Below the pieces are notes generated by a model. It saw only the letters and a program-made list of their open reading frames with translations. It made no database searches and was not told where the DNA came from. From the IMG/VR virus record IMGVR_UViG_3300035181_000357, positions 1-64,000 of that record: 64,000 bases of DNA. The stretch is one strand, 5' to 3'. Position numbers and translations under genes: made by a program. Positions 6,647-62,342 of this stretch are shown here, piece after piece. Position 1 is the first letter of the stretch; every line of letters begins with the position of its first letter.

Positions 6647-7628
6647 ACAACGCCTCTTCTATCAAGCTAAAGATAGTCCTACTAGTATGGAGTCTGAATC
6701 CTGCAGCACGATCATGGCCTCCACCACCTTTGAATGTACTAGCTATATATCCTGCACTAATTTTATCATTAGAACGTAAGCTAACAGATAAACCTATCTC
6801 GGTCTTACCATCTAATGTAATGTTCCTAAGTTCCCAACCTACGATCAAGTCCATGCCATCTAGACGCAACATCTCGGCCAGATCACTGATACTCGAGTCT
6901 CCATTATAGAAGGCCACATTGAAACCATTTATAGTTTTTAGTATACAGTTCTTTTTACGATTTAATGTTCTTAACTGATCTGTCTTGAACATGATAGAAG
7001 CCAGCTGTCTGTCATGTGGGGTTGGAATCCCATAGTATGAATTACCAAGCAGATTTAGATATAGAGATTGAGATCTAGACTCCTCGAATCTGGGATCATC
7101 AGATAGGAAACAATCAGCAATCCCTGCTAGCTCAGCTGCAGAAGTATCATCGCTAGAAATCCACGAAAACTGTAGTGCGACTTCATAAGCAAGAACAGCC
7201 CCAGACTCACCCTTACTATTAAGTCCGAACAGAATCTGGTTGGGATATTTTTCAATATAAGGAGCCAGATCAGCCAATCTACTGACATGGTGATCCAAAA
7301 TCTTCGCACCAGCTTTTAAGAAATCCTCTAACTGATCTGCTGGAGGACATGTATCCACAAACAGAGAATTCTCTGTAACGGATATTTTCTTATATGCTGT
7401 AACAGGATATAAGAAATCTGCATTATCCATGTTCTCGAACGGGACATACTTAAGTAGAAGATTTCTACCCATGATACCATCAGGACAGTAACTGTGAAAA
7501 TATAGTCTCTTAGTCTTCTCAATATTCTCTGAGAAATCCGACAACATGTCATCATTAATTATCTCTAACTGGTCTAATCTTAACATATCATCCTCAGATA
7601 ATAAGTACGGGACCGAAATCCCGTACAC
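6615..7628 (-). CDS. DHH/DHHA1 phosphoesterase (NrnA-like)
   Basis: HSYCPDG, FVD, ILDHH, and C-terminal SLRS...GGGGHDRAAGF. Confidence 0.85.
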   Translation of the reverse strand: MYGISVPYLLSEDDMLRLDQLEIINDDMLSDFSENIEKTKRLYFHSYCPDGIMGRNLLLKYVPFENMDNADFLYPVTAYKKISVTENSLFVDTCPPADQLEDFLKAGAKILDHHVSRLADLAPYIEKYPNQILFGLNSKGESGAVLAYEVALQFSWISSDDTSAAELAGIADCFLSDDPRFEESRSQSLYLNLLGNSYYGIPTPHDRQLASIMFKTDQLRTLNRKKNCILKTINGFNVAFYNGDSSISDLAEMLRLDGMDLIVGWELRNITLDGKTEIGLSVSLRSNDKISAGYIASTFKGGGGHDRAAGFRLHTSRTIFSLIEEALYGEGIICWVV

Positions 7629-7641
7629 ATAATCCTTCTAT

Positions 7642-7806
7642 TTATTTAGATATCGTACATTCCTTACATTCACAATATTCACATTTGACACAGTAGAAAT
7701 AGTCACCCTCTTTATCATGAACTAAAGGAGCATCTATAGTAACTTCCTGACCTTTGTATCTGGCATGAATTTCACAACCGTTAGGGCAAACTCGATCACT
7801 GTCCAC
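7642..7806 (-). CDS. Small Cys-rich protein (54 aa, GTG start)
   Basis: Manual translation MDSDRVCPNGCEIH...YCVKCEYCECKEC fills the intergenic gap; it is below the ORF-track length cutoff. Confidence 0.45.
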   Translation of the reverse strand: MDSDRVCPNGCEIHARYKGQEVTIDAPLVHDKEGDYFYCVKCEYCECKECTISK

Positions 7807-8551
7807 TTAAGATCTCGTTAATGAAGTCTTTAGCTTCCTGCCAAGTCAACACAGCACTAGCAGCAGCGACTTCATCATAATCCATATCTAATTTGCTGGC
7901 AATGTATCGGATAGCAGCTTCAGGACCGTTCTTGACTTCGATGAAGAACTTACTGAGATTCCCTTCTGCGAAGGATACGAATTGGTTACTCTTATTAGAA
8001 TCTTCGATTCTTTCAAGCATCTCTAGATTGGATTGTTTGTCATCTTCATTCCAGGAATTACCAGCTTCATCAAGCACACGTACAATTCTGGAATTAGGGG
8101 ATGAAGTCTTAGTGTTACCTGCTGTCAGGAATTCTGAGACAGCCTCAGACTCAGTGGCCAAACTAACTCGACCGAGTGAGCCAAACTTGATACGACCTAG
8201 GGAACGTAAGTGGAGATCAAGAGTAACTACTTCTGTCCCGACTTGCAATGCACATTCCTCATTGTCTAGAAGCAGACCACCAGATAGAAGGTAGTAGAGC
8301 TGGTCTGAGCTAACCTGAATACTAACAGCCACAGACTTAACATCTGGAGAAGCAATCTCTTCGTCGTCCTCGGCATAGTCTTTAAGGTGCTCAGCATAGA
8401 TATCAGCGACTTCTTTGTTGTGCTTAGAGTCTAAGATTCCAACGATATAGTAAGTTGGGAGCTCATCACTATCTTTCAGATGCTGGAAAAGATTCCAGCT
8501 AATCTCTAGTGCCTCAGCTTGTTTCTCGGTAATTGGTGTAAATTGATACAT
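7796..8551 (-). CDS. Hypothetical acidic protein
   Basis: 251-aa ORF in the operon with an upstream GAGG RBS; no recognised motif. Confidence 0.6.
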   Translation of the reverse strand: MYQFTPITEKQAEALEISWNLFQHLKDSDELPTYYIVGILDSKHNKEVADIYAEHLKDYAEDDEEIASPDVKSVAVSIQVSSDQLYYLLSGGLLLDNEECALQVGTEVVTLDLHLRSLGRIKFGSLGRVSLATESEAVSEFLTAGNTKTSSPNSRIVRVLDEAGNSWNEDDKQSNLEMLERIEDSNKSNQFVSFAEGNLSKFFIEVKNGPEAAIRYIASKLDMDYDEVAAASAVLTWQEAKDFINEILSGQ

Positions 8552-8589
8552 ATGTATGCCTCACTATTAACTGAATCTAGAAGTCTAGC

Positions 8590-8913
8590 TCAGATATGAT
8601 GGATTACCCCTTGCGAATCTGGTTTAGACCACATTCGCTTTTTATTTATCTCCATTTTACGGAGTACTTCATACTCCATATCGAAGCCCATCTGACCAGC
8701 TAAGTTCAGTGCGACGATTACAATATCGGCTAATTCTTCCTTCGCCTTGTCCAAGTCTTGTACTTCCCACTCTACTTTAAGCTCATTTAGCTCTTTTTCG
8801 AGGTGAAGCATCTGCCCATCAGGTGTACGATCTGGGATCTTGGCATCTGCCCAGGTCTTTATACCATCTTGAATATTTTTCAATCTTCTCTTACTTTTGA
8901 ACAAAGAAATCAT
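8590..8913 (-). CDS. MazG-like / DUF550-type dNTP pyrophosphohydrolase
   Basis: HLEKELNEL...EELADIVIV (ExxE..ExxD) and KMEINKKRMW...G.IHH C-terminus. Confidence 0.75.
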   Translation of the reverse strand: MISLFKSKRRLKNIQDGIKTWADAKIPDRTPDGQMLHLEKELNELKVEWEVQDLDKAKEELADIVIVALNLAGQMGFDMEYEVLRKMEINKKRMWSKPDSQGVIHHI

Positions 8914-9091
8914 TCCTTATCTCCCCAAACATGTCTAGTAGGTTTCTAGCTAATAGGATCTCACCATCATTAACACCTTCGTCATAAGCAGACGAATTAT
9001 CTGTGTACTGCTCAGCCAAGAAATATGGATCATCACAGGCTGCAGTTTCAGCTGCTTTAGTCTTAAGGTAGTCTAGTAATCGTTCATTCAT
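8891..9091 (-). CDS. Hypothetical protein
   Basis: 66 aa, overlaps both neighbours in operon fashion. Confidence 0.55.
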   Translation of the reverse strand: MNERLLDYLKTKAAETAACDDPYFLAEQYTDNSSAYDEGVNDGEILLARNLLDMFGEIRNDFFVQK

Positions 9092-9932
9092 AATCTGATC
9101 CTAAGAGCCATCGAGTAAACTTGTAATCCTTAGGAACATCTTCGATAGGATTGATTCCATATGCTTGAAGGAATCCACATTCTGCAGCACAACTTATTCT
9201 CGGAACTACCAGATCTGCATACATAGACTCATCCCCGGTTCCTACGATATTTCTGACTAGATCAAAGTGACGCTCATACACATGAAAGCTATCTGCTGTA
9301 TGATAGTATGTACCCAACCCTAACTCAGGGTAAACTTCTTTGAGATAAACAAATACCATCTCGTGGATAAAACTGAAACATGGTGCGTCATTTCCCATAC
9401 CAAACACAGCATCCTGTGATCGCATGTGCACACTCATGTTGACTCTGTTGTCTCTAATCCTGAAATTGAGACTATAAGTACATGGAACATCCTTTGCTTC
9501 ATCAATAAAATGTTCTGGCTCAGAGCCTAGGATAATAATACTGGCTCTACGACTATCTCTGTCTTTTATCAATTCCCTGACGACTCGTGTCATACCACCT
9601 TTGGTGAAGACATAGTGTCCGTAGTTGGAGTTAATATATGGGAGACCTCTAGAGTCTAGAACCTTAACATCTCCCCATATCTTTGCATGATCACAGATAG
9701 ACATATCATATCTGTCACCACGAAGATACCATAGGAATTCTTTCTTAATGTAATTGATATTTAATTTTCTATCTTTGAAATTGGTGAATCGAACGTATGG
9801 TTCTAACTCATAACTAAAATGTTCACACTCTAAGACAGGAAGGCCTCGAGGAGTTGACATCTTCCCTTTATCGATAAGCCTGGTATACACTTTATAGAAC
9901 TCGTTCCAGCTAACATATGAATCTAATGTCAT
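9084..9932 (-). CDS. Thymidylate-synthase-family enzyme, probable dCMP hydroxymethylase/methylase
   Basis: EFLWYLRG, NSNYG, DSRRA, DVPCT (catalytic Cys), MRSQDAVFGMGND, HVYERHF. Asp sits at the ThyA Asn177 position, as in T4 gp42 (MRSNDVVFGFRND). Confidence 0.8.
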   Translation of the reverse strand: MTLDSYVSWNEFYKVYTRLIDKGKMSTPRGLPVLECEHFSYELEPYVRFTNFKDRKLNINYIKKEFLWYLRGDRYDMSICDHAKIWGDVKVLDSRGLPYINSNYGHYVFTKGGMTRVVRELIKDRDSRRASIIILGSEPEHFIDEAKDVPCTYSLNFRIRDNRVNMSVHMRSQDAVFGMGNDAPCFSFIHEMVFVYLKEVYPELGLGTYYHTADSFHVYERHFDLVRNIVGTGDESMYADLVVPRISCAAECGFLQAYGINPIEDVPKDYKFTRWLLGSDYE

Positions 9933-10165
9933 TCTCTAGTCCTCAACCTAGTCAAAAGCGCAACATCCTCTAACCTGATACCCTCTGTAACATGCGCGAT
10001 CACAGACTCTATAGTAGCACTAGGTACTTTATTTCTTTTATAATTCTCTCTAATAATACCTAATAAAGTTGGAATAATCTCGTCTCTGTTATTAGACACT
10101 AGAGTATTCCAACTTCCATCTGTTTTATCTATTAGAGCTGACTTAACTTGTTCAGAAGTTATCAC
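9929..10165 (-). CDS. Hypothetical protein
   Basis: 78 aa, ATGA-type overlap with the downstream gene. Confidence 0.55.
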   Translation of the reverse strand: MITSEQVKSALIDKTDGSWNTLVSNNRDEIIPTLLGIIRENYKRNKVPSATIESVIAHVTEGIRLEDVALLTRLRTRE

Positions 10166-10622
10166 ACTGCTCTCTAATCTTTAGTACGAAGGTATCCCAA
10201 TCAGTTACTACTTCTTGACCATAATACTTAGCAGTGACATCAATATTACCTTTCCTGAAATACTTATCTGTACAGTATATCAAGACAGGAGCATTAGAAC
10301 CTAGACCCAATCCTAATTCCAGTAACGTGATTGGAGACTGGCTCCCATCTGCAAAATAGTATACAATCAGATCTGCATCTTCTTGTCCCTTTAGTTCCCA
10401 CTCAACCTGCTGTCTGAACTGTGGATCGTCAATACTCTGCTTCCAGCTACTATCCCAGTCATCTCGTCTTGGGTTAAGTAATAGAACATTCTCATCACTC
10501 AATTCTGAAGATAGCTTAGTCTGCCAATCTTCAGCGGATCCCATGTCGATAGAACCAGCTAAGAAGATGGTGAATTGAGCATCATTGTTATATGTTCCTG
10601 GTGCTTTTACTATCTTGGCCAT
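10152..10622 (-). CDS. Nucleoside 2-deoxyribosyltransferase-like / nucleotide N-glycosidase
   Basis: IFLAGSID...WQ...LLNPRRDDWD...QVEWEL.....AD.I..YF...SQSPITLLELG. Confidence 0.8.
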   Translation of the reverse strand: MAKIVKAPGTYNNDAQFTIFLAGSIDMGSAEDWQTKLSSELSDENVLLLNPRRDDWDSSWKQSIDDPQFRQQVEWELKGQEDADLIVYYFADGSQSPITLLELGLGLGSNAPVLIYCTDKYFRKGNIDVTAKYYGQEVVTDWDTFVLKIREQCDNF

Positions 10623-11530
10623 TACAGTTCTCCTATATCGATACTCTTAGACATTGCTCTCTGAAAATCATCCATTATAGAATCAGGCATAGAGTCGTTC
10701 CCGATAATTGTTAAGGAATTTAACCTGGGATAAACATTTAATACCTCTGGATACGCATATGCGAAGACAGTTAATTTTCTAGCCAACAGCGAGCGGCCCA
10801 AAATATCCCCACCAGACTTTGAGAAGAACTTGGTATGGATCTTGGGAACCGCGATCCAGCCATCTGAGTTCTCCATCTGCATGGGGACAGTAAACTCGGT
10901 AGGCCACAGAAGTTGAAGAAGTTTGTGATGCGGTTGATGAAGTTTCATGTATTTCTCAACTTCAAACCGAAGCATAGACATATTCTGACTATCTGCGAGT
11001 GCAGGAGTCTGGTTCTTTGCAGATAGTCTCCAACTGATGTTGTTCGAGAACTTACCTGCAATACGTTCAATAGCTACTAGGTTAACAGCTTTGTTGTACG
11101 TCTCTGACCAAGGTGATTCACTCTTATCAATCTTCCCCTTAACCAATGGATCTGGAGATCCTAGTTTAACAGCATCAGCAGCCGTCTCCATGATGTCTCG
11201 TCGAAGACTATCTAGATCAAATTGGAACTGGGGAGCAGCCTGTAGATTTAGTATACACTGTGATGCAATGTTATAGTCTAGAAGATCTGTATTAGCCAAC
11301 TGTTTAGACAACAGGATCCCATCATATGTAACAGGTCTCTCTCGCTTAACTGATTCAAAGATATCAGAGAAGATAGTCCATACGAACTGTCTAGCATGGT
11401 CAGTCCGATCGAAAGCAATAGGAAGTTTACTCGACCAGTAATCAGCCATAGTTTCTTCAGTGGCCATAACAATTCCTACGACTTCACAGAATTGCTTTAA
11501 GATAACGTCATTAAGATTTTTAGAGCTCAC
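10622..11530 (-). CDS. Hypothetical protein
   Basis: 302-aa coupled ORF, no recognised motif. Confidence 0.6.
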   Translation of the reverse strand: MSSKNLNDVILKQFCEVVGIVMATEETMADYWSSKLPIAFDRTDHARQFVWTIFSDIFESVKRERPVTYDGILLSKQLANTDLLDYNIASQCILNLQAAPQFQFDLDSLRRDIMETAADAVKLGSPDPLVKGKIDKSESPWSETYNKAVNLVAIERIAGKFSNNISWRLSAKNQTPALADSQNMSMLRFEVEKYMKLHQPHHKLLQLLWPTEFTVPMQMENSDGWIAVPKIHTKFFSKSGGDILGRSLLARKLTVFAYAYPEVLNVYPRLNSLTIIGNDSMPDSIMDDFQRAMSKSIDIGEL

Positions 11531-12509
11531 AATAATCCTTTACCAGGTCTTTAACCGTTTTATCATCACAGATGGCATCTAGAATTTCTAGAGGATCATC
11601 TGACTCAACTTCTGATACTTGCTCTTCCATGTCATCTAGGAACATCTTCATCTCTTCAGATTTAGCTACTTTCTTCATAGATGAATCAGCTATCTGAAAA
11701 CATGCCTCTAATGGAACTGTTGGTACTATCTTCTCTACTACCTTAATCCCTTCTGCAGAAAAAGAGATTACTGGAACCACGATGTCACGATCGACTTCAT
11801 CGATTGACAAGCTGGCACGAGACAAGGATCCATAATGTAGGTGATGAGTCTTCCCGACTTTCTTTGGTTCAACTCGTGAATGGTCGTGTCCCCATAACAC
11901 TACATCAAACCCGTATGGTTCTAAAGTATTGTATCCAATAGTTCTTTCACCAAAGAAATCACCATCTTCACCAGGACGTCCTACCTGGTGGATCACAGCT
12001 ACACGGTAGCAATCATCATACTTGTCAATCTCTGGTTTAGAGGCTTTTAGTGCCTCTAACGTAGTCTCAGTGTCTCTGTAATCAAACCCAATTACCATAA
12101 CCCTGACACCCTCGTCCTGACACCTGAATACTGTAGGTTCAGTTATTGGGCGATAGACATGTGATGCAATCAGGACACCTAGGGGTGAGTTGTCTAGCGT
12201 TGATATGTTATGATTAAAATCGTGATTTCCAACAATCCCATAAATATTTCCCCCAGGAAAAGAAGAAAAAACCTCTATAGCCTGATTGATCATACTTGGA
12301 GGATTGGCTAGAGATTGCCACCTCTTAACATGAAACACATCCCCGCCACATATCGCAGCACCTTTAACTTTATGGGTGAGGGCACTGGCAAACCTTATCT
12401 TGCCCAGGATGGTCTGTTCATAATTATCTCGTCGTCTTCCAGGAGGAGTAGCGGATAGATGAATATCGGTAATGAAGGTTAGATTTATTTTATGATGATT
12501 TAGTATCAT
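11520..12509 (-). CDS. SbcD/Mre11/gp47-like metallophosphoesterase nuclease
   Basis: TDIH, GGDVF, GNHD, H, GHDH and YGSL calcineurin-like motifs. Confidence 0.85.
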   Translation of the reverse strand: MILNHHKINLTFITDIHLSATPPGRRRDNYEQTILGKIRFASALTHKVKGAAICGGDVFHVKRWQSLANPPSMINQAIEVFSSFPGGNIYGIVGNHDFNHNISTLDNSPLGVLIASHVYRPITEPTVFRCQDEGVRVMVIGFDYRDTETTLEALKASKPEIDKYDDCYRVAVIHQVGRPGEDGDFFGERTIGYNTLEPYGFDVVLWGHDHSRVEPKKVGKTHHLHYGSLSRASLSIDEVDRDIVVPVISFSAEGIKVVEKIVPTVPLEACFQIADSSMKKVAKSEEMKMFLDDMEEQVSEVESDDPLEILDAICDDKTVKDLVKDYCEL

Positions 12510-12525
12510 AACTTCCGGAACAAAA

Positions 12526-12605
12526 GAGAAGAGAAGAGAAGAGAAGAGAAGAGAAGAGAAGAGAAGAGAAGAGAAGAGAAGAGAAGAGAAGAGAAGAGAA
12601 GAGAA
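12526..12605. repeat. Perfect (GAGAA)16 pentanucleotide tandem repeat, intergenic
   Basis: 16 units counted directly, between the dCMP deaminase stop and the SbcD start. Confidence 0.95.
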
Positions 12606-12615
12606 GAAATCTTGA

Positions 12616-13206
12616 TTAATCGATAACTCTTATGAATTTCATACCAGAATTCCTAGATATCCAGGATAATGCTGGTCTATCATACTCGGGTTGAGGTCTA
12701 TCTGTTTTATATATGACTGTATTAACATTCCGAACTACACATTGTTTAGCACAATCTAAACAGGGGACAGCTGAGCAGAATAACACATACCCATCTTTGT
12801 CATTCAGATTAGATACCCTTGAAAATGCATCTATTTCTGCATGTATAGTCAGTCTACAGGTTCTTTCAGGTTGACATCCTATATCATTACATGAGAGTTC
12901 GTTGTCTTTTGAATATGGATAACGATTATATCCATATTCAGATTCTCTACTTTGGATAGAATAGATACATGACCCTATCTTAGCTCTACAGCATGGGGAG
13001 AAAGAACTTGTGATCTCTATATCCTTGAATATTTTAGATGTAAATTCATCTAGTTCAGCCAAGCCACCTAGCCCGAGAAGACCTGTTAAATAACTAGCCA
13101 TATCAAATTCTGGTTCCACTGGATACCAGATTATATTGTCACTATAGTCTAACTTTAGTTTAGACTCAGTTAAAGGATCACCGAATTCTTCTTGGACGAA
13201 TCGCAT
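12616..13206 (-). CDS. dCMP deaminase-like protein
   Basis: SPC....IG, GYN, HAE, PCLDC Zn-deaminase motifs, after a ~65-aa N-terminal extension. Confidence 0.8.
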   Translation of the reverse strand: MRFVQEEFGDPLTESKLKLDYSDNIIWYPVEPEFDMASYLTGLLGLGGLAELDEFTSKIFKDIEITSSFSPCCRAKIGSCIYSIQSRESEYGYNRYPYSKDNELSCNDIGCQPERTCRLTIHAEIDAFSRVSNLNDKDGYVLFCSAVPCLDCAKQCVVRNVNTVIYKTDRPQPEYDRPALSWISRNSGMKFIRVID

Positions 13207-13484
13207 TAGAGCTCCTTGAACTTAGATACCAAGGTCTCGGCCTTTTCAAGCGTCTCTTCTATCTCAGCCAGTACTTTTTCAGATTCAGCTTGAAGCTTCT
13301 CCTGCAGTTCCTTTATCTCCTGAACAGATAGTTCTTCTACATCATATCCAAGATCAGAAAGTTCTTTCATAGCTCTCTTCTTATTCTGCTCTTCGACAGC
13401 AATCTTACCTACGATCGCTTCTTTGCTTTTAGTGAGAGTCACTACTCTCTTCTCAACGGCTGCAATTCTCTCTTGAGTATCCAT
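13206..13484 (-). CDS. Small coiled-coil protein
   Basis: 92 aa, heptad-rich and E/K/L-rich; directly follows SbcC-N. Confidence 0.6.
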   Translation of the reverse strand: MDTQERIAAVEKRVVTLTKSKEAIVGKIAVEEQNKKRAMKELSDLGYDVEELSVQEIKELQEKLQAESEKVLAEIEETLEKAETLVSKFKEL

Positions 13485-14660
13485 TTAAACCTCTACTTTA
13501 AACATGTAACCACACTTAGGGCATTCTACTTTTGACGCTTGTTCTATCTGTTCTTGCTTACGGAGATCCTTTAAATCTCCTGATGTAGATTCTAAATCTG
13601 ATGATACTGTATCTAAGTCATTTTTGAGCAGCTTCAATAACCTGATATATCCGATGTAGTTGGGAAGTAACAGACACGCCGTATCTAGGTCTAGCAATTT
13701 CTTCTTATCTTTATTCAAGGAATCAGTGTCTAGAGCCTTAGTATCCAGGGTCACACTCTTTTTATTATATACATCTAAGAGGTATACAATAGAAGATAGT
13801 CTGGATTGTTTGTTTACAAGCTCCACTAGTTCCTTGAATGTTTCTAAACTTTTAGAAGATAAAGAATACGCGTACCTTGAATATCTATATGTGGATAGTA
13901 GACTAGATACCTTAGAGTTATTGGCTACAGGAGTCAAATCAAAATCTAGAACATCTATCTCAGATTTAGTCTCTACTAACTTATCTAGTTTATCAGATGT
14001 GATTAAAAATGTATCGACACAATCTACTGTGTCTAACAGTTCATTGTTCCTAGAATCCAATTTCTTTAAAGTTTTGGAAACAGGTTTAGCTTGTTCCAAG
14101 AACATACTTAGTTTATGTGCTTTAGCCTCTGCATCAGTTATCATCTTAGCCGTTACTTTAGCCTCTACATCTAGTTCTTTTATCTTCGTACCGATCCTTT
14201 TCTTACCTTGATCTAATTTCTCTGTTGAAGAAAATGCACCCAACACAGTGTTCAAATCAGCTGGTGAACTACAAAGAAGGAATTGATTATCAAACTGACC
14301 ACCAAAGATGGGATCAAGCTCGACATTCCCAATATGGATAGAAGAGTACCCCATCTTAGCAACAGCTTCTGGGATATTCCCTGCGAGCTTCCCATACTCT
14401 ACACCGTTCACGGTATAAGTAGTAGCAGCCTTCGTAGTTCTTTTAGCAACGACAGTGTTCTTATCAAAAGAGATAGAAACAGCTAATTCTGTCTCACCTA
14501 TCTTGATCTTGTTAGCACCGATATCATTCCTAAATGTTCCACGAATCATTCGAAATACAGAAGACTTACCAATATCTGAGGGACCCACTATAGCAGTGAA
14601 TCCCTCGATATCAAGAAATGCATCTGACCAAGATTGAAAGTTAGATGCTTGTACTCGCAT
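13485..14660 (-). CDS. SbcC/Rad50/gp46-like ATPase, N-terminal half only
   Basis: NFQS, Walker A GPSDIGKS, Q-loop GQFD, coiled coil, ends in CPKC zinc hook. No signature motif or Walker B. Confidence 0.85.
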   Translation of the reverse strand: MRVQASNFQSWSDAFLDIEGFTAIVGPSDIGKSSVFRMIRGTFRNDIGANKIKIGETELAVSISFDKNTVVAKRTTKAATTYTVNGVEYGKLAGNIPEAVAKMGYSSIHIGNVELDPIFGGQFDNQFLLCSSPADLNTVLGAFSSTEKLDQGKKRIGTKIKELDVEAKVTAKMITDAEAKAHKLSMFLEQAKPVSKTLKKLDSRNNELLDTVDCVDTFLITSDKLDKLVETKSEIDVLDFDLTPVANNSKVSSLLSTYRYSRYAYSLSSKSLETFKELVELVNKQSRLSSIVYLLDVYNKKSVTLDTKALDTDSLNKDKKKLLDLDTACLLLPNYIGYIRLLKLLKNDLDTVSSDLESTSGDLKDLRKQEQIEQASKVECPKCGYMFKVEV

Positions 14661-15913
14661 TAGAACTCGTCTTCATCGTCTAAAATATCAGCGGATCCAT
14701 CGAATTCAGCGATATCTACACCATCTTCTTTGTGACCAGCCACTAACATCTCACCCTCGGTCAATACCGTATCAAAGGCTCCAGAATTATCAGAACGAAT
14801 GACTTCAACGAGCTGAGCTTTCAATCTGGTTAAGACCTCGAGATTTTCATCATAGACTAGATCTCTTACAGCCTGTTCCTTGTTGTCGTAGGTAGCGATG
14901 ATGTCTTCGTCGATCCCGACGAGCCACTTCTGACCCTTGTTCCTAATAAGACCATAACTACGAGCAAGCTCACGAACAGACATCCAATCATCAAGGCCAC
15001 GACCAGTTCTAAGATAGATAGAGTATTCTCTGTAGCTACCCATCGTAACCTTGTTCTTAAGAACTCGAACCTTGACCTTGGTAGCTTTGACACTCTTTGA
15101 GCTATTACTGTCAGACTCTGCTTCCATCAAGAAAGGATCGTCCACAGCACCCTTTAAAGCCTTCTGAGCATTGACTTCGATCATCAAAGATGGGACGTAG
15201 CGAACACTGTTTCCACCAGGTAGAACATATGGTAGATTGGTGTAAGATGGGTACTTTTGAGCCATAGCAGCCTCTTGACTACCATCGATACGAGCACGAA
15301 TCTGATTAACCATCAAGAATGAACAATCATGCTGCATTGCATATGGTAAAAGAATATCGAAGAAACGAACCATCATACGAGCGTGTTCTCCGACGCTTGC
15401 CTTGAAAGCTTGACCACTGCGGATGTCCTTCTTGTCTCGCTTCTGCTTCATCTTTGGAATGGAGTCGAATACGAACAGCTTACATCCGGCTTCAATGTAC
15501 TCCACAGCCTTCTGAATACAGTCCTCAATATCCGAGATCTTGAATACAGCGAGACCTGGACCAGTATTAACACCGACATTCTTAAGGTATTCGAAGGTGA
15601 CAGTTCCTTCAAAGTCGAAGATTACTGCAGGTAATCCAGTTTCTTTCTGGTAATTCTTCACCAAGTGATAACAGATAGTTGATTTACCGCCATGTTCTTT
15701 ACCATGAATATGGATTACACGACCACCAAAGGGGATACCTTGTAATCTTAGAACTTCATCCCAGACAATCGAATTGGTTGGGACCTTATGTTCTTGGTAA
15801 TTCTCGTCGATTAGGAACGAATTCGCATCATCTTTATACGATGCAGATAAAGAGGCAAACCTTGTCATCACATCACCACTAAGATCTTCTGATTTTGTTT
15901 TCTTTCTTGCCAT
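14660..15913 (-). CDS. recA: RecA/UvsX recombinase
   Basis: GIPFGGRVIHIHGKEHGGKS, FDSIP, NQIR, GGNSVRY..S, KNKV. Confidence 0.9.
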   Translation of the reverse strand: MARKKTKSEDLSGDVMTRFASLSASYKDDANSFLIDENYQEHKVPTNSIVWDEVLRLQGIPFGGRVIHIHGKEHGGKSTICYHLVKNYQKETGLPAVIFDFEGTVTFEYLKNVGVNTGPGLAVFKISDIEDCIQKAVEYIEAGCKLFVFDSIPKMKQKRDKKDIRSGQAFKASVGEHARMMVRFFDILLPYAMQHDCSFLMVNQIRARIDGSQEAAMAQKYPSYTNLPYVLPGGNSVRYVPSLMIEVNAQKALKGAVDDPFLMEAESDSNSSKSVKATKVKVRVLKNKVTMGSYREYSIYLRTGRGLDDWMSVRELARSYGLIRNKGQKWLVGIDEDIIATYDNKEQAVRDLVYDENLEVLTRLKAQLVEVIRSDNSGAFDTVLTEGEMLVAGHKEDGVDIAEFDGSADILDDEDEF

Positions 15914-59714: not shown

Positions 59715-62342
59715 TTACTCAGCTACTAATTCAGGAGCTAGTTCAACATCCGATACAAATTCGCTTTCAGAACCTTCTTCAGAATCCTCTAGTTCCACAC
59801 CGAGATTATCGGCTAGATTCTCAACACCCTCAGCGAGATGGTCTAGATTACTATAGATCTCATTTAAGGACAAGCTAACTTCTTCTGGTTCCTCATCGGC
59901 TACACGTCTGAGACCAACAGCAAACTTCTTAGCAATACGCTTCTTAGCAATACGCTTCTTAGCAATACGCTTCTTAGCAATACGCTTCTTAGCTAGTTTG
60001 CCTTCCTTGGCTTCACCTTCTAGAGCCTCTTCCTCTAAGGATTCACCCTCTTCAGGAACAAGATCGTCAGGAGTCAGATTTAGATTCTCAGCAAGAGCAT
60101 CTAGAGCTTCTACCTGTTCCATGAACTTATCACGGAGTTCGGCAATGGCTTCACCTAGAGCTTCTGGCTCTTCCTCAGCAATACGCTTTAAAGTAGCGAA
60201 CTTGGAGGCAGCAGTCTTGGCTTCAGACAAGGCTTCTGCTTTTGCAGCTGCTTCCTTTTTCTTGGCGATAATCTGTGATAATCTTCCCATTGGTTTCTCC
60301 TGTGAACTGGTTACAGCGCTATCTTGCTTTTTAACAGACTTTTCTTCGTCTTCCATCTTGACTAGTTTCTTGGTATAATCGTTGACCAATTTGACCAGCA
60401 GATTGCTCTTATCGATGTTACCTTCTTTAATGAACTTGGTGATGCACTCTCTTAGGTTTACAATGGCCTTCTTGTAATATGAGAATGACTTCTGAGTCTT
60501 AGCTTCGAAATCCTTCCAGATCTCGTCGCTGACTTCATTTGTCAGAGTAGCATCAAAGAGAATAGCTAGATTTGGACCAACTTTCTTACCCATTGTTCTG
60601 GTAAGCCATGGGAAGAATTCAGCCTTGAACTCTTTAAGATCAGAAGAGCTCTCTAACTCAGTGTGGTCGTCAAGAGTTGGCTTGGTATCGAAAATATTAT
60701 AGGTCTCGTCACCAGTTCCAAATTCTGGCTGTACTTCCTGGTTCTTGATCTCAACCTTCTTCTTCTCTTCACCAGTCTCTGGATCGATCTCAACGGTCTT
60801 GTAAACCTTACCATAACCATAGTGTTCTCCGACCCAATCTCTGGCCTTGGATACAGAATAGCTGAACATCTTCTTCAAGAAAGTCGTTACCTGCTTCTCT
60901 AGTGGGTTGTCCTTGTCAGGAGCTCTGTTAGGATCAAACTTTAACAGAGTCTTCAACTGATACAAGTGAGTAATGATCATGTGGTGAGCAGCTTCGTCAC
61001 GCAGATCCTGGTCAGCAATAACCTTCTTGTAGATACTCTCCAAGTATGAACTCCAGTTCATATCCTCATCTACAGGGAGCCCAGCTTCCCTGATAGCAGT
61101 CTTGACATACAAGTCAAAGTCTTTGTTGTAGGAGGTGATCATGAGGTTTGAGAATCTTCTTAAGGTAGAGCCGAGGAGATTTGTTAAACTTGCTAGATGG
61201 GTTTTATTTAAGGTTTCTATTGAGCCGTCAAGATATCTTGCTTGAATTCTGAGATCATCAGTGGTTCGGGCAGCAGCGAGTACGCGGAACGGACGAGAGC
61301 CTGATGGCACCACATAGGACCCAAGCTTAAAGGCCTTCTTTAGACTTGCAATATTGGGTTCCATTGTTTCTAAGAAATTAGAAACTTCTTGGAAGTACTC
61401 TTCTTCATTCTGTGTAGCATTATAATAGGCCGAATCATAATTGTCTAAGTTCTCTTCGAAGTCACCAGCTTGGCCGTATTCTTCATACTTATCAAATGCG
61501 TGTAAGAATTCATATAGTTCAGATAAACCTAATTGGAAATCACTATATTCACTCTCTGTCATATCAAGCCACTGCATTACCTGAGCATCGTCGTTGGCAT
61601 CGATGAAATTCTGCCAGGCTTCACAGTCAGATGTTTCTTCCAAATCCTGAGGTAGATTCTTGACTACCTCTACTGGAATTTCATCCATATCGATATCTAA
61701 TGACATCTGGTGGGATTCTAGATCGAATCCTGGGAATCTCTCCTCGATTTTTCCTACATCATGGGAATTATCATCACAGAAACGGGACCAGGCATTACTC
61801 GTACCACTAATGTCAGTGTTATTCATGACGTCTTCAGCATCATCAAAGGAATGATATTCCTGGCCTGACTCTTCTGCATAATTCTCAAAAGCGGCATTGA
61901 CCAGTACTAATACTTTATTCACTTCTCCGAGAGTGCCCTCTTTAGGTAACTCGTTGAGGAGCATATCCCCTTGCCCATTTCCAGCATAGCCGTTTCCAAC
62001 CCACTGGCCGAATCCACCATTCTGAACCTGATAATGAAGCTTGGCGAGTGCAAACAACATCTTATGGGTATCGGAAGGAAGCTGCTTAAGCATCTCCTGC
62101 ATACTTTTATCACCCATCTGTTGCCAGTTCTTGTGAATCTCGCTGAGGGCCTTCTGAAGATAATCTTCATAGAACCCTGCGAACTTCGCATGAGGATTTA
62201 CAGCCTTAGACGATACAGGCTTCTCACGACCTTCTAGACCACGGTCTACAGAACCATCACTGGTTTCCTTTGCTTTCAGATGCTCGAAAGCTTCCGATGC
62301 AACAACGGTCTTAAATATATCTGCGGATAGTTTGTGACGCAT
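59715..62342 (-). CDS. Multidomain acidic protein: DMP19/DUF4375-like + sigma-like + scaffold-like repeats
   Basis: YQVQNGGFGQWVGNGY...DNYDSAYY; DEAAHHMI...KFDPNR...TTFL; duplicated EEPE..L.E......LA.NL C-terminal helices. Confidence 0.55.
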   Translation of the reverse strand: MRHKLSADIFKTVVASEAFEHLKAKETSDGSVDRGLEGREKPVSSKAVNPHAKFAGFYEDYLQKALSEIHKNWQQMGDKSMQEMLKQLPSDTHKMLFALAKLHYQVQNGGFGQWVGNGYAGNGQGDMLLNELPKEGTLGEVNKVLVLVNAAFENYAEESGQEYHSFDDAEDVMNNTDISGTSNAWSRFCDDNSHDVGKIEERFPGFDLESHQMSLDIDMDEIPVEVVKNLPQDLEETSDCEAWQNFIDANDDAQVMQWLDMTESEYSDFQLGLSELYEFLHAFDKYEEYGQAGDFEENLDNYDSAYYNATQNEEEYFQEVSNFLETMEPNIASLKKAFKLGSYVVPSGSRPFRVLAAARTTDDLRIQARYLDGSIETLNKTHLASLTNLLGSTLRRFSNLMITSYNKDFDLYVKTAIREAGLPVDEDMNWSSYLESIYKKVIADQDLRDEAAHHMIITHLYQLKTLLKFDPNRAPDKDNPLEKQVTTFLKKMFSYSVSKARDWVGEHYGYGKVYKTVEIDPETGEEKKKVEIKNQEVQPEFGTGDETYNIFDTKPTLDDHTELESSSDLKEFKAEFFPWLTRTMGKKVGPNLAILFDATLTNEVSDEIWKDFEAKTQKSFSYYKKAIVNLRECITKFIKEGNIDKSNLLVKLVNDYTKKLVKMEDEEKSVKKQDSAVTSSQEKPMGRLSQIIAKKKEAAAKAEALSEAKTAASKFATLKRIAEEEPEALGEAIAELRDKFMEQVEALDALAENLNLTPDDLVPEEGESLEEEALEGEAKEGKLAKKRIAKKRIAKKRIAKKRIAKKFAVGLRRVADEEPEEVSLSLNEIYSNLDHLAEGVENLADNLGVELEDSEEGSESEFVSDVELAPELVAE
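59926..59993. repeat. Perfect 15-nt coding repeat x4.5 encoding (KKRIA)4
   Basis: TTCTTAGCAATACGC repeated exactly. Confidence 0.95.

What the first reader, a model, noticed from the sequence alone, without database searches (positions are those of the whole stretch)
12526..12605. Perfect (GAGAA)16 microsatellite immediately upstream of the SbcD nuclease gene
Seen: an 80-bp pure polypurine/polypyrimidine tract in an otherwise gap-free operon, ending 16 nt before the SbcD ATG, with no upstream start in that frame. Known: long perfect SSRs are rare in phages and slip at high rates; homopurine tracts can form H-DNA. Inference: a contingency locus tuning SbcD translation, a recombination or replication signal, or an mRNA (UUCUC)n tract complementary to the GGAGAA-type RBSs this phage uses. 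An assembly artefact is also possible.
Basis: partly seen in the sequence, partly recalled or inferred. Interest (0 to 1): 0.6.

Follow-up and report, generated by a model that had tools for sequence, protein, structure and literature searches.

The report
Long microsatellite spacer before phage SbcD
A real, perfectly regular 84-base five-letter repeat fills the only untranslated gap in a jumbo phage's recombination operon, but relatives lack it, so it looks like a young slippage product at an insertion hot spot rather than a conserved signal.

Summary
Window 12524-12607 is a perfect period-5 run of 16.8 copies, inside an 88-nt homopurine tract (12522-12609). It is the only long repeat of this kind in the 210-kb phage record.

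- **Orientation and position.** All genes run on the minus strand, so the mRNA carries (UUCUC)n. The run fills a 106-nt untranslated spacer between a dCMP-deaminase-like gene and the SbcD nuclease gene.
- **Not an artefact.** Two independent assemblies give the same 84-nt run, which is shorter than their largest k-mers. Contigs from four sequencing runs enter it.
- **Copy-number variation is unproven.** An apparent 11-unit allele has exactly the 59-nt length that a k=55 graph collapse would produce.
- **Not conserved.** Relatives have overlapping genes, a 52-aa ORF or a GIY-YIG homing endonuclease gene at this junction. Near-identical strains carry foreign DNA joined exactly at the tract edge.

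Best reading: a young slippage-born filler at an insertion hot spot. Its likeliest effect (inferred) is to uncouple SbcD translation and expose an 89-nt G-free, C-rich, unstructured RNA, the composition of a Rho loading site.

In passing: about 5-unit (GAGAA) and (GGAAA) tracts sit next to iteron-like repeats inside more than 200 phage replication-initiator genes.

The parts
12524..12607 (-). Perfect pentanucleotide run. It reads (TTCTC)n on the coding strand and (GAGAA)n on the + strand: 84 nt, 16.8 copies.
   Evidence: TRF gives period 5 and 100% matches. A regular-expression scan of the whole record finds no comparable SSR. The periodic run is 84 nt both in the phage's own record and in the independent contig L010.
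12522..12609 (+). 88-nt homopurine/homopyrimidine mirror-repeat tract. Its transcript is G-free for 89 nt (12522-12610), with 40% C in the repeat unit.
   Evidence: Longest purine tract in 210 kb; the next is 21 nt. Longest such run in the record: 89 nt against 63 and 47 for the next-longest runs free of G or C on the + strand.
12510..12615 (-). 106-nt untranslated intercistronic spacer, almost wholly made of the tract: 9 nt, then the tract, then 12 nt.
   Evidence: ORF list and stop-to-stop frames show no ATG, GTG or TTG in any frame that enters the tract. There is no Rfam match. Promoter- and terminator-like sites do not exceed chance.
12512..12516 (-). GGAAG, a weak Shine-Dalgarno-like site 2 nt before the SbcD ATG.
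   Evidence: Read from the sequence. The phage's genes show AGGAG/GGAGA motifs with a G peak at -10 to -7.
12510..12521 (-). 12 nt shared by the repeat allele and the alternative allele. The rearrangement breakpoint lies exactly at 12521|12522, the edge of the purine tract.
   Evidence: Contigs L002, L005 and L006 are 99.7-99.9% identical to the window downstream. They diverge into unrelated sequence of about 50% GC at this point.
12616..13206 (-). dCMP-deaminase-like gene (196 aa); stop codon TAA at 12616-12618.
   Evidence: Pfam dCMP_cyt_deam_1 (3e-08) and PHROG 174.
11520..12509 (-). SbcD/Mre11-like nuclease gene (329 aa); ATG at 12507-12509.
   Evidence: Pfam Metallophos and PHROG 100, SbcD-like. 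101 homologues were found, many named SbcCD nuclease subunit by their source.
13485..15913 (-). Upstream operon context: SbcC/Rad50-like ATPase N-part (13485-14660) and UvsX/RecA-like recombinase (14660-15913).
   Evidence: Pfam AAA_15/AAA_23 and RecA; PHROG 16465 and PHROG 97. Weak Rad50 N-lobe match in the PDB.
10622..11530 (-). 302-aa ORF of unknown function that overlaps the SbcD stop; first gene downstream of SbcD.
   Evidence: ORF list. Relatives have the same 296-302-aa gene directly after SbcD. No Pfam, PHROG or PDB match.

Best explanation
This is a genuine, evolutionarily young pentanucleotide microsatellite. It fills an untranslated spacer at a recurrent insertion hot spot between the dCMP-deaminase-like gene and the SbcD gene of an uncultivated jumbo phage from sediment and microbial-mat samples.

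**Shown**
- In the compact relatives the two genes overlap, which fits translational coupling.
- In this lineage DNA has been inserted between them. What remains in the window strain is 9 nt, (TTCTC)16.8 and 12 nt carrying a weak ribosome site.
- The tract is not a conserved signal.

**Inferred**
- The tract most likely grew by replication slippage.
- Its physical consequences would be threefold. SbcD translation is uncoupled from the deaminase. After the deaminase stop codon the transcript exposes about 89 nt of ribosome-free, G-free, 40%-C, unstructured RNA with two YC dimers per unit, which is the composition and length of a Rho loading (rut) site. The duplex is an H-DNA-capable mirror repeat, which may be fragile.
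- I therefore expect the main effect to be Rho-dependent polarity, or at least reduced and uncoupled expression, on SbcD and the genes behind it. The strength should depend on tract length.
- Whether that effect is selected or merely tolerated is open.
For: **The tract is real**
- The same 84-nt run is found in the phage's own record and in contig L010 from another sample, which differs at 6 positions in 6.6 kb.
- 84 nt is shorter than the JGI k-mers 99 and 127 and gives no graph branching.
- Logan contigs of four runs end inside the tract.

**It is young and sits at a hot spot.** Syntenic relatives with 61-67% SbcD identity have other things at this junction:
- overlapping genes (L065, L066);
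- a 52-aa hydrophobic ORF (L003, L004);
- a reverse-strand GIY-YIG/NUMOD3 gene (L063, L064).

Fifty-one more distant loci have no SSR before SbcD. Strains 99.7-99.9% identical carry foreign sequence of about 50% GC joined exactly at 12521|12522. That sequence is 80% identical in protein to a 119-aa ORF on 53%-GC contigs from the same samples.

**It resembles a rut site**
- The transcript has an 89-nt G-free run, the longest such run in the record.
- The tract is unpaired in the centroid fold.
- It is untranslated.
- Rut sites need 60-80 nt of single-stranded, C-rich, G-poor RNA with YC dimers, and the Rho footprint is 57 +/- 2 nt (PMC6144790).
- A simple (UC)15 repeat terminates through Rho only when it is untranslated (Guerin 1998, as cited in PMC5021804).
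- No phage RNA polymerase or sigma factor was found in the held 210 kb.
Against: - No expression data exist; none of the four runs found is on record as RNA.
- The host is unknown, so the presence of Rho and the use of host RNA polymerase are assumptions. Only 69% of the genome is held.
- A ribosome starting at the SbcD site 12 nt after the tract could shield the RNA from Rho.
- Attenuating SbcD relative to the upstream SbcC-like ATPase makes little physiological sense. That argues for a tolerated rather than a selected effect.
- Slippage is inferred. No reliable copy-number series was obtained.
Confidence: 0.55

Rival explanations
1. Adaptive contingency locus. Frequent unit gain and loss tunes SbcD translation, either by masking purine-rich ribosome sites or by acting as a pyrimidine-rich S1/standby platform of variable length.
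For: - The unit length is not a multiple of 3, and the tract is perfect and long.
- It lies directly before a weak ribosome site.
- The same unit, (CTCTT)n, drives phase variation of Neisseria opa genes (PMC3745409).
- Contig L007 shows 11 units.
- The unpaired pyrimidine leader fits a standby site.
Against: - The tract lies in no ORF that has a start codon, and not between promoter elements.
- There is no stable pairing with the SbcD ribosome site; fold z is about 0.
- The 11-unit run of 59 nt is exactly the k=55 collapse value.
- Two strains that differ by SNPs share 16.8 copies.
- Every relative examined lacks the tract.
Confidence: 0.12
2. Replication or recombination signal. The polypurine tract acts as a DNA-unwinding element or origin component, or as an H-DNA structure that stalls forks and seeds recombination next to the recombination genes.
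For: - The tract is a homopurine mirror repeat (sequence).
- A rearrangement breakpoint lies exactly at its edge.
- The same unit, as (GAGAA) of about 5 copies, is constrained at the DNA level next to iteron-like repeats inside replication-initiator genes. This holds for at least 119 viral contigs and for phages phiPSA1 and epsilon15.
- (GGAAA) of about 5 copies behaves likewise.
Against: - There are no iterons within about 150 nt on either side.
- The held record has no DnaT-type initiator.
- The GC-skew minimum is near 110 kb, not at this locus.
- Origin-type tracts are 25-40 nt, whereas this one is 84-88 nt.
- Relatives lack the tract.
- The sense transcript is the pyrimidine strand, which forms the weaker type of RNA-DNA hybrid (established knowledge), so an R-loop origin is disfavoured.
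Confidence: 0.1
3. Coding element. The tract encodes a hydrophobic (FSSLL)n peptide, either as an opa-like leader, a small membrane protein like the 52-aa ORF of relative L003, or a readthrough tail of the deaminase.
For: - All three sense frames are open and read FSSLL repeats.
- Relative L003 has a small hydrophobic ORF at the same place.
- The collapsed spacer aligns weakly with that ORF: score 19 against 14.2 +/- 2.3, with 48 of 1000 shuffles reaching it.
Against: - No frame has an ATG, GTG or TTG upstream of the tract, apart from the deaminase ORF, which ends at TAA before it.
- The alignment with the L003 ORF is at chance level (p about 0.05).
Confidence: 0.04
4. Assembly or scaffolding artefact.
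For: - Low-complexity tracts are error-prone in assembly.
- Every k=31 Logan contig breaks inside the tract.
- One JGI contig carries a collapsed-looking 59-nt version.
Against: - Two independent assemblies carry an identical 84-nt run with identical flanks.
- That length falls in no collapse range of k = 33, 55, 77, 99 or 127.
- Contigs of four runs enter the tract. Both sides are seen in X1. X3's left-side contig overhangs by the same 35 letters as X1's, while its right-side contig carries the alternative junction.
Confidence: 0.03

Closest known systems
Neisseria opa coding repeat, (CTCTT)n
   Same: - Same repeat unit (a cyclic permutation of TTCTC).
- Same sense: the mRNA carries the pyrimidine strand.
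- A pentameric unit that shifts the frame with each slip.
- Slipped-strand changes at about 10^-3 per generation (PMC3745409).
- H-DNA capability (own knowledge).
   Different: The opa repeat lies inside the ORF, in the leader-peptide coding part, so unit number switches the frame on and off. Here the tract is untranslated: no start codon reads into it. Copy-number variation is not demonstrated here.
Rho utilisation (rut) sites and the artificial polypyrimidine (UC)15 terminator of Guerin et al. 1998
   Same: - Single-stranded, G-free, C-rich, pyrimidine-only RNA of 60-90 nt with dense YC dimers.
- Untranslated.
   Different: Natural rut sites are not microsatellites, and none is known to be length-hypermutable. 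No termination has been measured here, and the host and its Rho are unknown.
H-DNA-forming homopurine/homopyrimidine mirror repeats
   Same: A pure purine strand, mirror symmetry and a length of 88 bp.
   Different: The structure forms only under negative supercoiling or low pH (own knowledge), which was not tested. The phage may also carry modified bases, which could change the behaviour.
Iteron plus pentameric polypurine tract inside phage replication-initiator genes (seen here in phiPSA1, epsilon15 and more than 200 IMG/VR contigs). Lambda's ori within gene O has a comparable iteron plus purine-asymmetric A/T-rich layout (own knowledge).
   Same: Same (GAGAA) unit and the same homopurine character.
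   Different: Those tracts are 25-40 nt long, lie in the linker-coding middle of an initiator ORF and abut iteron-like repeats. The window tract is 84 nt, intergenic, without iterons and without such an initiator nearby.
Free-standing homing-endonuclease insertion sites between conserved genes of large phages, as with the T4 seg genes (own knowledge)
   Same: Two relatives carry a GIY-YIG/NUMOD3 gene at the same gene junction. The junction shows several alternative fillings.
   Different: The window allele contains no endonuclease gene. Any link between endonuclease activity and the birth of the repeat is speculation.

Membership tests
Phase-variable contingency locus (SSR-mediated) | The SSR lies inside the regulated ORF downstream of its start codon, or between or next to core promoter elements. 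| tested here: not met
   No ATG, GTG or TTG lies upstream in any frame that enters the tract. Promoter-like sites do not exceed chance and none flanks the tract.
Phase-variable contingency locus (SSR-mediated) | Unit number varies within or between closely related populations. | tested here: inconclusive
   Contigs show 16.8, 16.8 and 11.8 copies. The 11.8-copy run (59 nt) equals the k=55 minimal-loop length. Raw reads were not available, only k=31 contigs.
Phase-variable contingency locus (SSR-mediated) | Unit number changes expression of the adjacent gene. | not testable with these tools
   This needs reporter assays or transcript and protein data. None of the four runs found is on record as RNA.
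Rho utilisation (rut) site | 60-80 nt of C-rich, G-poor RNA with suitably spaced YC dimers. | tested here: met
   The transcript has 89 nt without G and 40% C in the repeat unit. Each unit has two UC dimers, giving spacings of 10-15 nt. The criteria come from PMC6144790.
Rho utilisation (rut) site | Single-stranded and free of ribosomes. | tested here: met
   The centroid structure leaves the tract unpaired. The tract lies after the deaminase stop codon and before the SbcD start.
Rho utilisation (rut) site | Rho-dependent transcript release downstream, in a host that has Rho and with a Rho-sensitive polymerase. | not testable with these tools
   The host is unknown. No phage RNA polymerase or sigma factor was found in the 69% of the genome that is held, which is compatible with host polymerase but not proof.
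H-DNA (intramolecular triplex) motif | Homopurine/homopyrimidine mirror repeat of at least about 15-30 bp. | tested here: met
   The tract is 88 nt of pure purine. The reverse of (GAGAA)n is the same periodic sequence.
H-DNA (intramolecular triplex) motif | Triplex formation under superhelical stress. | not testable with these tools
   This needs S1 or chemical probing of supercoiled DNA.
Phage origin module (iterons plus polypurine pentamer tract in an initiator gene) | Iteron-like repeats directly 5' of the tract on the purine strand. | tested here: not met
   The 144 nt on the 5' side hold only a 7-nt inverted repeat. The other side holds one 8-nt pair 65 nt away. In the origin-like loci, 97 of 107 have at least 3 copies of some 6-mer there.
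Phage origin module (iterons plus polypurine pentamer tract in an initiator gene) | The tract lies in the linker-coding middle of a replisome-organiser or DnaT-like gene and is 25-40 nt long. | tested here: not met
   The tract is intergenic and 84-88 nt long. The record has no DnaT-domain match.
SbcD/Mre11 nuclease (downstream gene) | Calcineurin-like phosphoesterase domain with conserved metal-binding motifs. | tested here: met
   Pfam Metallophos and PHROG 100 match. In 16 aligned homologues the columns D15, H17, D57, N95, H96, H174, H208 and H210 are invariant.

The most novel reading that the evidence does not exclude
The tract is a hypermutable Rho-loading site. The copy number of an untranslated (UUCUC)n spacer would set how efficiently Rho loads; 11 units is near the 57-nt footprint and 16 units is well above it. 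That would set the dose of SbcD and of the downstream nucleotide-modification genes. This would be a transcription-termination contingency locus, a kind not described in phages or bacteria.
Probability: 0.15. Interest if true: 0.7.

Novelty: new member of a known kind. Interest (0 to 1): 0.4.

Why it matters
Long perfect microsatellites are very rare in phage genomes. Pentanucleotide repeats were the rarest class in a mycobacteriophage survey (PMC6426759). Among four jumbo-phage records scanned here, only two such tracts were found.

This case gives a clean natural example in which a repeat has replaced translational coupling inside a recombination operon. It also produces an RNA with textbook Rho-loading composition. 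If tract length modulates polarity, that would be a new and simple way for a phage population to vary gene dosage. If not, the locus still documents how an intergenic hot spot turns over within a population that is more than 99% identical. At this one junction the survey found a homing endonuclease gene, a small ORF, foreign DNA and a microsatellite.

There is also a practical lesson. Tandem-repeat copy numbers taken from metagenome assemblies can be k-mer artefacts: 59 nt at k=55 here, and 128 nt at k=127 in a relative.

Tried and rejected
**Searches for relatives or the alternative allele that found nothing**
- Megablast and blastn of 11000-14000 against 50,697 phage records gave no match.
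- An exact-peptide scan of viral contigs with SbcD alone gave no relative. It succeeded only with an alignment.
- Two metagenome scans, one with the left flank and one with the alternative-allele sequence, gave 0 hits. Records near the window are left out of that collection.
- The alternative-allele pattern gave 0 hits in viral contigs.

**Reads**
- Read laying returned only k=31 Logan contigs, and it skipped 12514-12614 as repeats. Unit numbers and loose ends could therefore not be read.

**The 11-unit allele**
- I first took L007's 11 units as proof of polymorphism. I withdrew this after the k=55 collapse arithmetic and simulation.

- RNA folds of the 16- and 11-unit spacers show no significant structure and no masking of the ribosome site.
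- The sigma-70 promoter and intrinsic terminator scan was at or below chance.
- Rfam gave nothing at the tract.
- The origin reading was tested with iteron, DnaT and GC-skew checks and was not met.

**Side leads**
- Homology of the spacer to the 52-aa ORF of L003 is marginal (p about 0.05).
- The 302-aa ORF as the Rad50 C-terminal half: no PDB or Pfam support, and its only cultured homologue (Tunturi_5) is not adjacent to SbcD.
- Pfam and PHROG scans of the alternative-allele fragment gave nothing.
- The full text of Guerin 1998 is not held.

Full report
**1. The observation**

The + strand carries (GAGAA)16 at 12526-12605. Tandem Repeats Finder extends the perfect period-5 run to 12524-12607, which is 16.8 copies with 100% matches. 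The pure purine tract is 12522-12609, 88 nt.

The window is the first 64 kb of a 210,611-bp IMG/VR virus record that CheckV rates 69% complete. In that whole record this is the only perfect SSR longer than 30 nt; the next is an in-frame (ACA)10. It also gives the longest C-free run on the + strand: 89 nt, against 63 and 47 for the next-longest runs free of G or C on that strand.

All genes here are on the - strand, so the sense strand and the mRNA carry (TTCTC)n and (UUCUC)n.

The tract occupies a 106-nt gap between two genes:
- Upstream is a dCMP-deaminase-like ORF (12616-13206), ending in a TAA stop.
- Downstream is an SbcD/Metallophos ORF (11520-12509), starting with ATG.

Further upstream lie a 92-aa ORF, an SbcC/Rad50-like ATPase N-part and a UvsX-like recombinase. 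Downstream lie a 302-aa ORF, a Nuc_deoxyri_tr2 protein and a thymidylate-synthase-like protein.

Between 8590 and 17027 this is the only gap longer than 12 nt. No frame that enters the tract has an ATG, GTG or TTG.

**2. Real, or an artefact?**

Four public runs from sediment and microbial-mat metagenomes (four studies) hold the locus, but only as k=31 Logan contigs. In every run the contigs stop inside the tract, and the tool skipped 12514-12614 as repeats. That is what a k=31 graph must do with a perfect repeat, so it shows presence but not length.

Exact-protein look-ups then recovered JGI contigs that span the locus:
- the phage's own record (L008);
- L010 from another sample, which differs at 6 positions in 6.6 kb (99.91% identical);
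- L007, with 35 mismatches in 7.8 kb (99.24% identical).

L008 and L010 both have an 84-nt run. L007 has 59 nt.

The JGI workflow assembles 2x150 reads with metaSPAdes at k = 33, 55, 77, 99 and 127 (bioRxiv 10.1101/2020.09.30.320929). A de Bruijn simulation on the real flanks gives these results:
- An 84-nt run causes no branching at k=99 or k=127, so that length is resolved by reads.
- The shortest path at k=55 yields exactly 59 nt.

L007's 11 units are therefore what a collapse would produce, and they cannot count as a second allele. I conclude that the tract and its 16.8 copies are real, and that copy-number variation is unproven.

**3. Comparative anatomy of the junction**

SbcD has many homologues. 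The nearest, apart from the same phage, are 61-67% identical and lie in syntenic operons. At the deaminase|SbcD junction they show three other states:

| State at the junction | Loci |
|---|---|
| Overlapping stop and start (TAATG, or an 8-nt overlap), the compact state that fits translational coupling | L065, L066 |
| A 52-aa hydrophobic ORF | L003, L004 |
| A 219-225-aa GIY-YIG/NUMOD3 homing-endonuclease gene on the opposite strand | L063, L064 |

Fifty-one more distant jumbo-phage loci (23-45% SbcD identity; 47 of them 37-45%) have no SSR in front of SbcD.

Within the window phage's own population, three contigs (L002, L005, L006) are 99.7-99.9% identical to the window downstream. They replace everything 5' of the 12 nt before the ATG with unrelated sequence of about 50% GC. 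That sequence ends an ORF 30 nt before the SbcD ATG. The breakpoint is exactly 12521|12522, the edge of the purine tract.

The foreign sequence is absent from the held record. Its 31-aa end is 80% identical to a 119-aa protein of unknown function, which is encoded on 53%-GC contigs from the same samples. Those contigs share nothing else with this phage.

In run X3 the deaminase-side contig overhangs by the same 35 letters as in the source run X1. This suggests, by inference only, that the tract is still present to the left of the insert.

The junction is therefore a recurrent insertion hot spot, and the microsatellite is specific to this lineage.

**4. What the tract is not**

- *Structured RNA or a known RNA family.* The tract is unpaired in the centroid fold, and folding energy equals that of shuffles (z = -0.08 and -0.24). 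Rfam finds nothing there.
- *Promoter or intrinsic terminator.* Neither class of site exceeds chance.
- *Mask for the SbcD ribosome site.* The phage uses AGGAG/GGAGA-type ribosome sites. SbcD has only GGAAG, 2 nt before the ATG. Pairing of that site with the tract appears in the minimum-energy fold but not in the centroid.
- *Coding sequence.* This would need a start codon that is absent.
- *Replication origin.* There are no iterons beside the tract, the record has no DnaT-type initiator, and the GC-skew minimum is at about 110 kb.

**5. The most likely mechanism**

*Shown.* An untranslated, ribosome-free stretch follows the deaminase stop. Its RNA is G-free for 89 nt, has 40% C in the repeat unit, carries two UC dimers per unit and is unstructured.

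*Established knowledge.* Rho loads on 60-80 nt of single-stranded, C-rich, G-poor RNA through YC-binding clefts, with a footprint of 57 +/- 2 nt (PMC6144790). A plain (UC)15 repeat is an efficient Rho-dependent terminator only when it is not translated (Guerin et al. 1998, as cited in PMC5021804).

*Inference.* If host RNA polymerase transcribes this operon and the host has Rho, the tract should load Rho and impose polarity on SbcD and the genes behind it. No phage RNA polymerase or sigma factor was found in the held 210 kb. The strength of the effect should depend on tract length. The tract also breaks the translational coupling inferred from the overlapping genes of the compact relatives.

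The DNA is a mirror homopurine repeat and so is capable of forming H-DNA. The exact breakpoint at its edge fits fragility, but it is a single observation.

Because the tract is not conserved, I regard these effects as tolerated consequences of a young slippage product rather than a proven adaptation. My confidence differs between the parts of the claim:
- real and lineage-specific: about 0.9;
- the Rho effect specifically: about 0.3.

**6. Comparison with known systems**

- *Neisseria opa coding repeat.* The unit is a cyclic permutation of the (CTCTT)n repeat (PMC3745409). The opa repeat works inside the ORF, however, so that defining feature is not met here.
- *Rut sites.* The tract meets the sequence criteria of a rut site and of an H-DNA motif. 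The functional criteria could not be tested.
- *Origin-like modules.* It fails the tests for the origin-like module described in section 7.
- *Rarity.* Pentanucleotide SSRs are the rarest class in phages (PMC6426759). I found no paper describing such a tract in a phage.

I file it as a new member of a known kind, namely a microsatellite, with an untested and more novel possibility: a length-tunable Rho loading site.

**7. Noticed in passing: origin-like polypurine tracts**

This is possibly more interesting than the finding itself.

The features of these hits are:
- In 110 of them the tract lies in the middle of an ORF with a median length of 267 aa, read on the purine strand, giving the peptide REEKRREEK.
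- Four of the eight ORFs scanned against Pfam, and the annotated phage homologues, are replication initiators: Phage_rep_org_N, DnaT, Lin1244_N with Phg_2220_C, and (below the curated cut-off) DUF1376. In phiPSA1 and epsilon15 the gene is annotated as a replication initiation protein.
- The tract is almost always 26 or 28 nt long.
- Its Arg codons are AGA in 354 of 355 cases. Elsewhere in the same ORFs AGA makes up 9% of Arg codons.
- In 97 of 107 loci the 70 nt on its 5' side hold at least 3 copies of a locus-specific 6-mer. The comparison figures are 14 for sequence further upstream and 2 for shuffled sequence.

The composition-matched control (GGAAA)5 gave 97 contigs with the same layout. 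Of these, 81 have the tract inside an ORF, giving the peptide KGKERKGKE, and Lin1244_N was found in 9 of 10 ORFs tested.

This looks like a general module of iterons plus a pentameric polypurine tract, that is, an origin embedded in the initiator gene. Searches of the held papers found no description of it.

**8. Limits**

- No raw reads, no RNA data and no host are available.
- Only 69% of the genome is held.
- The alternative allele is known only for its last 113 nt.

Noticed in passing
L067-L185 (IMG/VR loci); L221:1897-1922 (Pseudomonas phage phiPSA1, NC_024365.1); L222:1876-1898 (Salmonella phage epsilon15, NC_004775.2): A (GAGAA) tract of about 5 copies (mostly 26 or 28 nt) sits in the linker-coding middle of phage replication-initiator genes. 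It lies directly 3' of locus-specific iteron-like repeats. Arg codons inside the tract are AGA in 354 of 355 cases, against 9% elsewhere in the same ORFs. The contigs range from 40 to 69% GC. This looks like an origin embedded in the initiator gene, with a DNA-level constraint on the tract. The held papers do not describe it.
   Followed up: partly
L223-L319 (IMG/VR loci): The composition-matched control (GGAAA)5 gave 97 contigs with the same layout. Runs are 25-40 nt, and 81 of 97 lie inside a mid-sized ORF, giving the peptide KGKERKGKE. Pfam Lin1244_N was found in 9 of 10 ORFs tested, and repeats are enriched on the 5' side. Both possible pentamers made of two G and three A therefore mark initiator genes.
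   Followed up: partly
L050:321-448 (= G001:C1:100789-100916; IMGVR_UViG_3300044823_000365): A distant jumbo-phage relative has a perfect intergenic (GGCGA)n run about 30 nt before a gene start and 2.5 kb upstream of its SbcD. The run is 128 nt long, which falls in the k=127 collapse range, so the true tract is probably longer.
   Followed up: partly
L006:1-122, L005:1-83, L002:1-70; L321:909-1268: Near-identical strains carry foreign DNA of about 50% GC joined at window 12521|12522. It ends an ORF that is 80% identical to a 119-aa protein of unknown function. That protein is encoded on 53%-GC contigs from the same samples, next to a DUF2201_N gene. The rest of the insert was not recovered.
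   Followed up: partly
L063:2281-2958 and L064:2293-2952; L003:4855-5013: Two relatives have GIY-YIG/NUMOD3 homing-endonuclease genes on the opposite strand at the deaminase|SbcD junction. A third relative has a 52-aa hydrophobic ORF there.
   Followed up: yes
window 7535-13206 (- strand) and the matching genes in L003 to L066: A conserved nucleotide-metabolism set surrounds SbcD: a dCMP-deaminase-like gene, a Nuc_deoxyri_tr2 gene, a thymidylate-synthase-like gene and a weak MazG / dATP-dGTP diphosphohydrolase-like gene. This suggests the phage has modified DNA bases.
   Followed up: no
window 13485-14660 and 10622-11530 (- strand): The SbcC/Rad50-like ATPase is only 391 aa, the Walker A half. 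The 302-aa ORF after SbcD contains SKSGGD and, 37 residues later, LTIIGND, so it might be a divergent C-terminal half. It has no Pfam or PDB support. Its one cultured homologue, in the 309-kb Tunturiibacter phage Tunturi_5 (27% identity), is not adjacent to SbcD.
   Followed up: partly
window 59925-59993: A perfect 15-nt tandem repeat of 4.6 copies with 100% matches lies within the span of the 875-aa ORF 59715-62342 (-).
   Followed up: no
G000:C1:113229-113258 and about 110 kb (outside the window): (ACA)10 lies in frame inside a 1081-aa ORF. It is just past the GC-skew minimum, the region where + strand ORFs begin, at about 110 kb.
   Followed up: partly
L007:3866-3924: An assembly caution. 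This contig's 59-nt version of the tract equals the minimal loop traversal at k=55 of the JGI assembler. Tandem-repeat copy numbers taken from metagenome contigs should be checked against the k-mer sizes used.
   Followed up: yes
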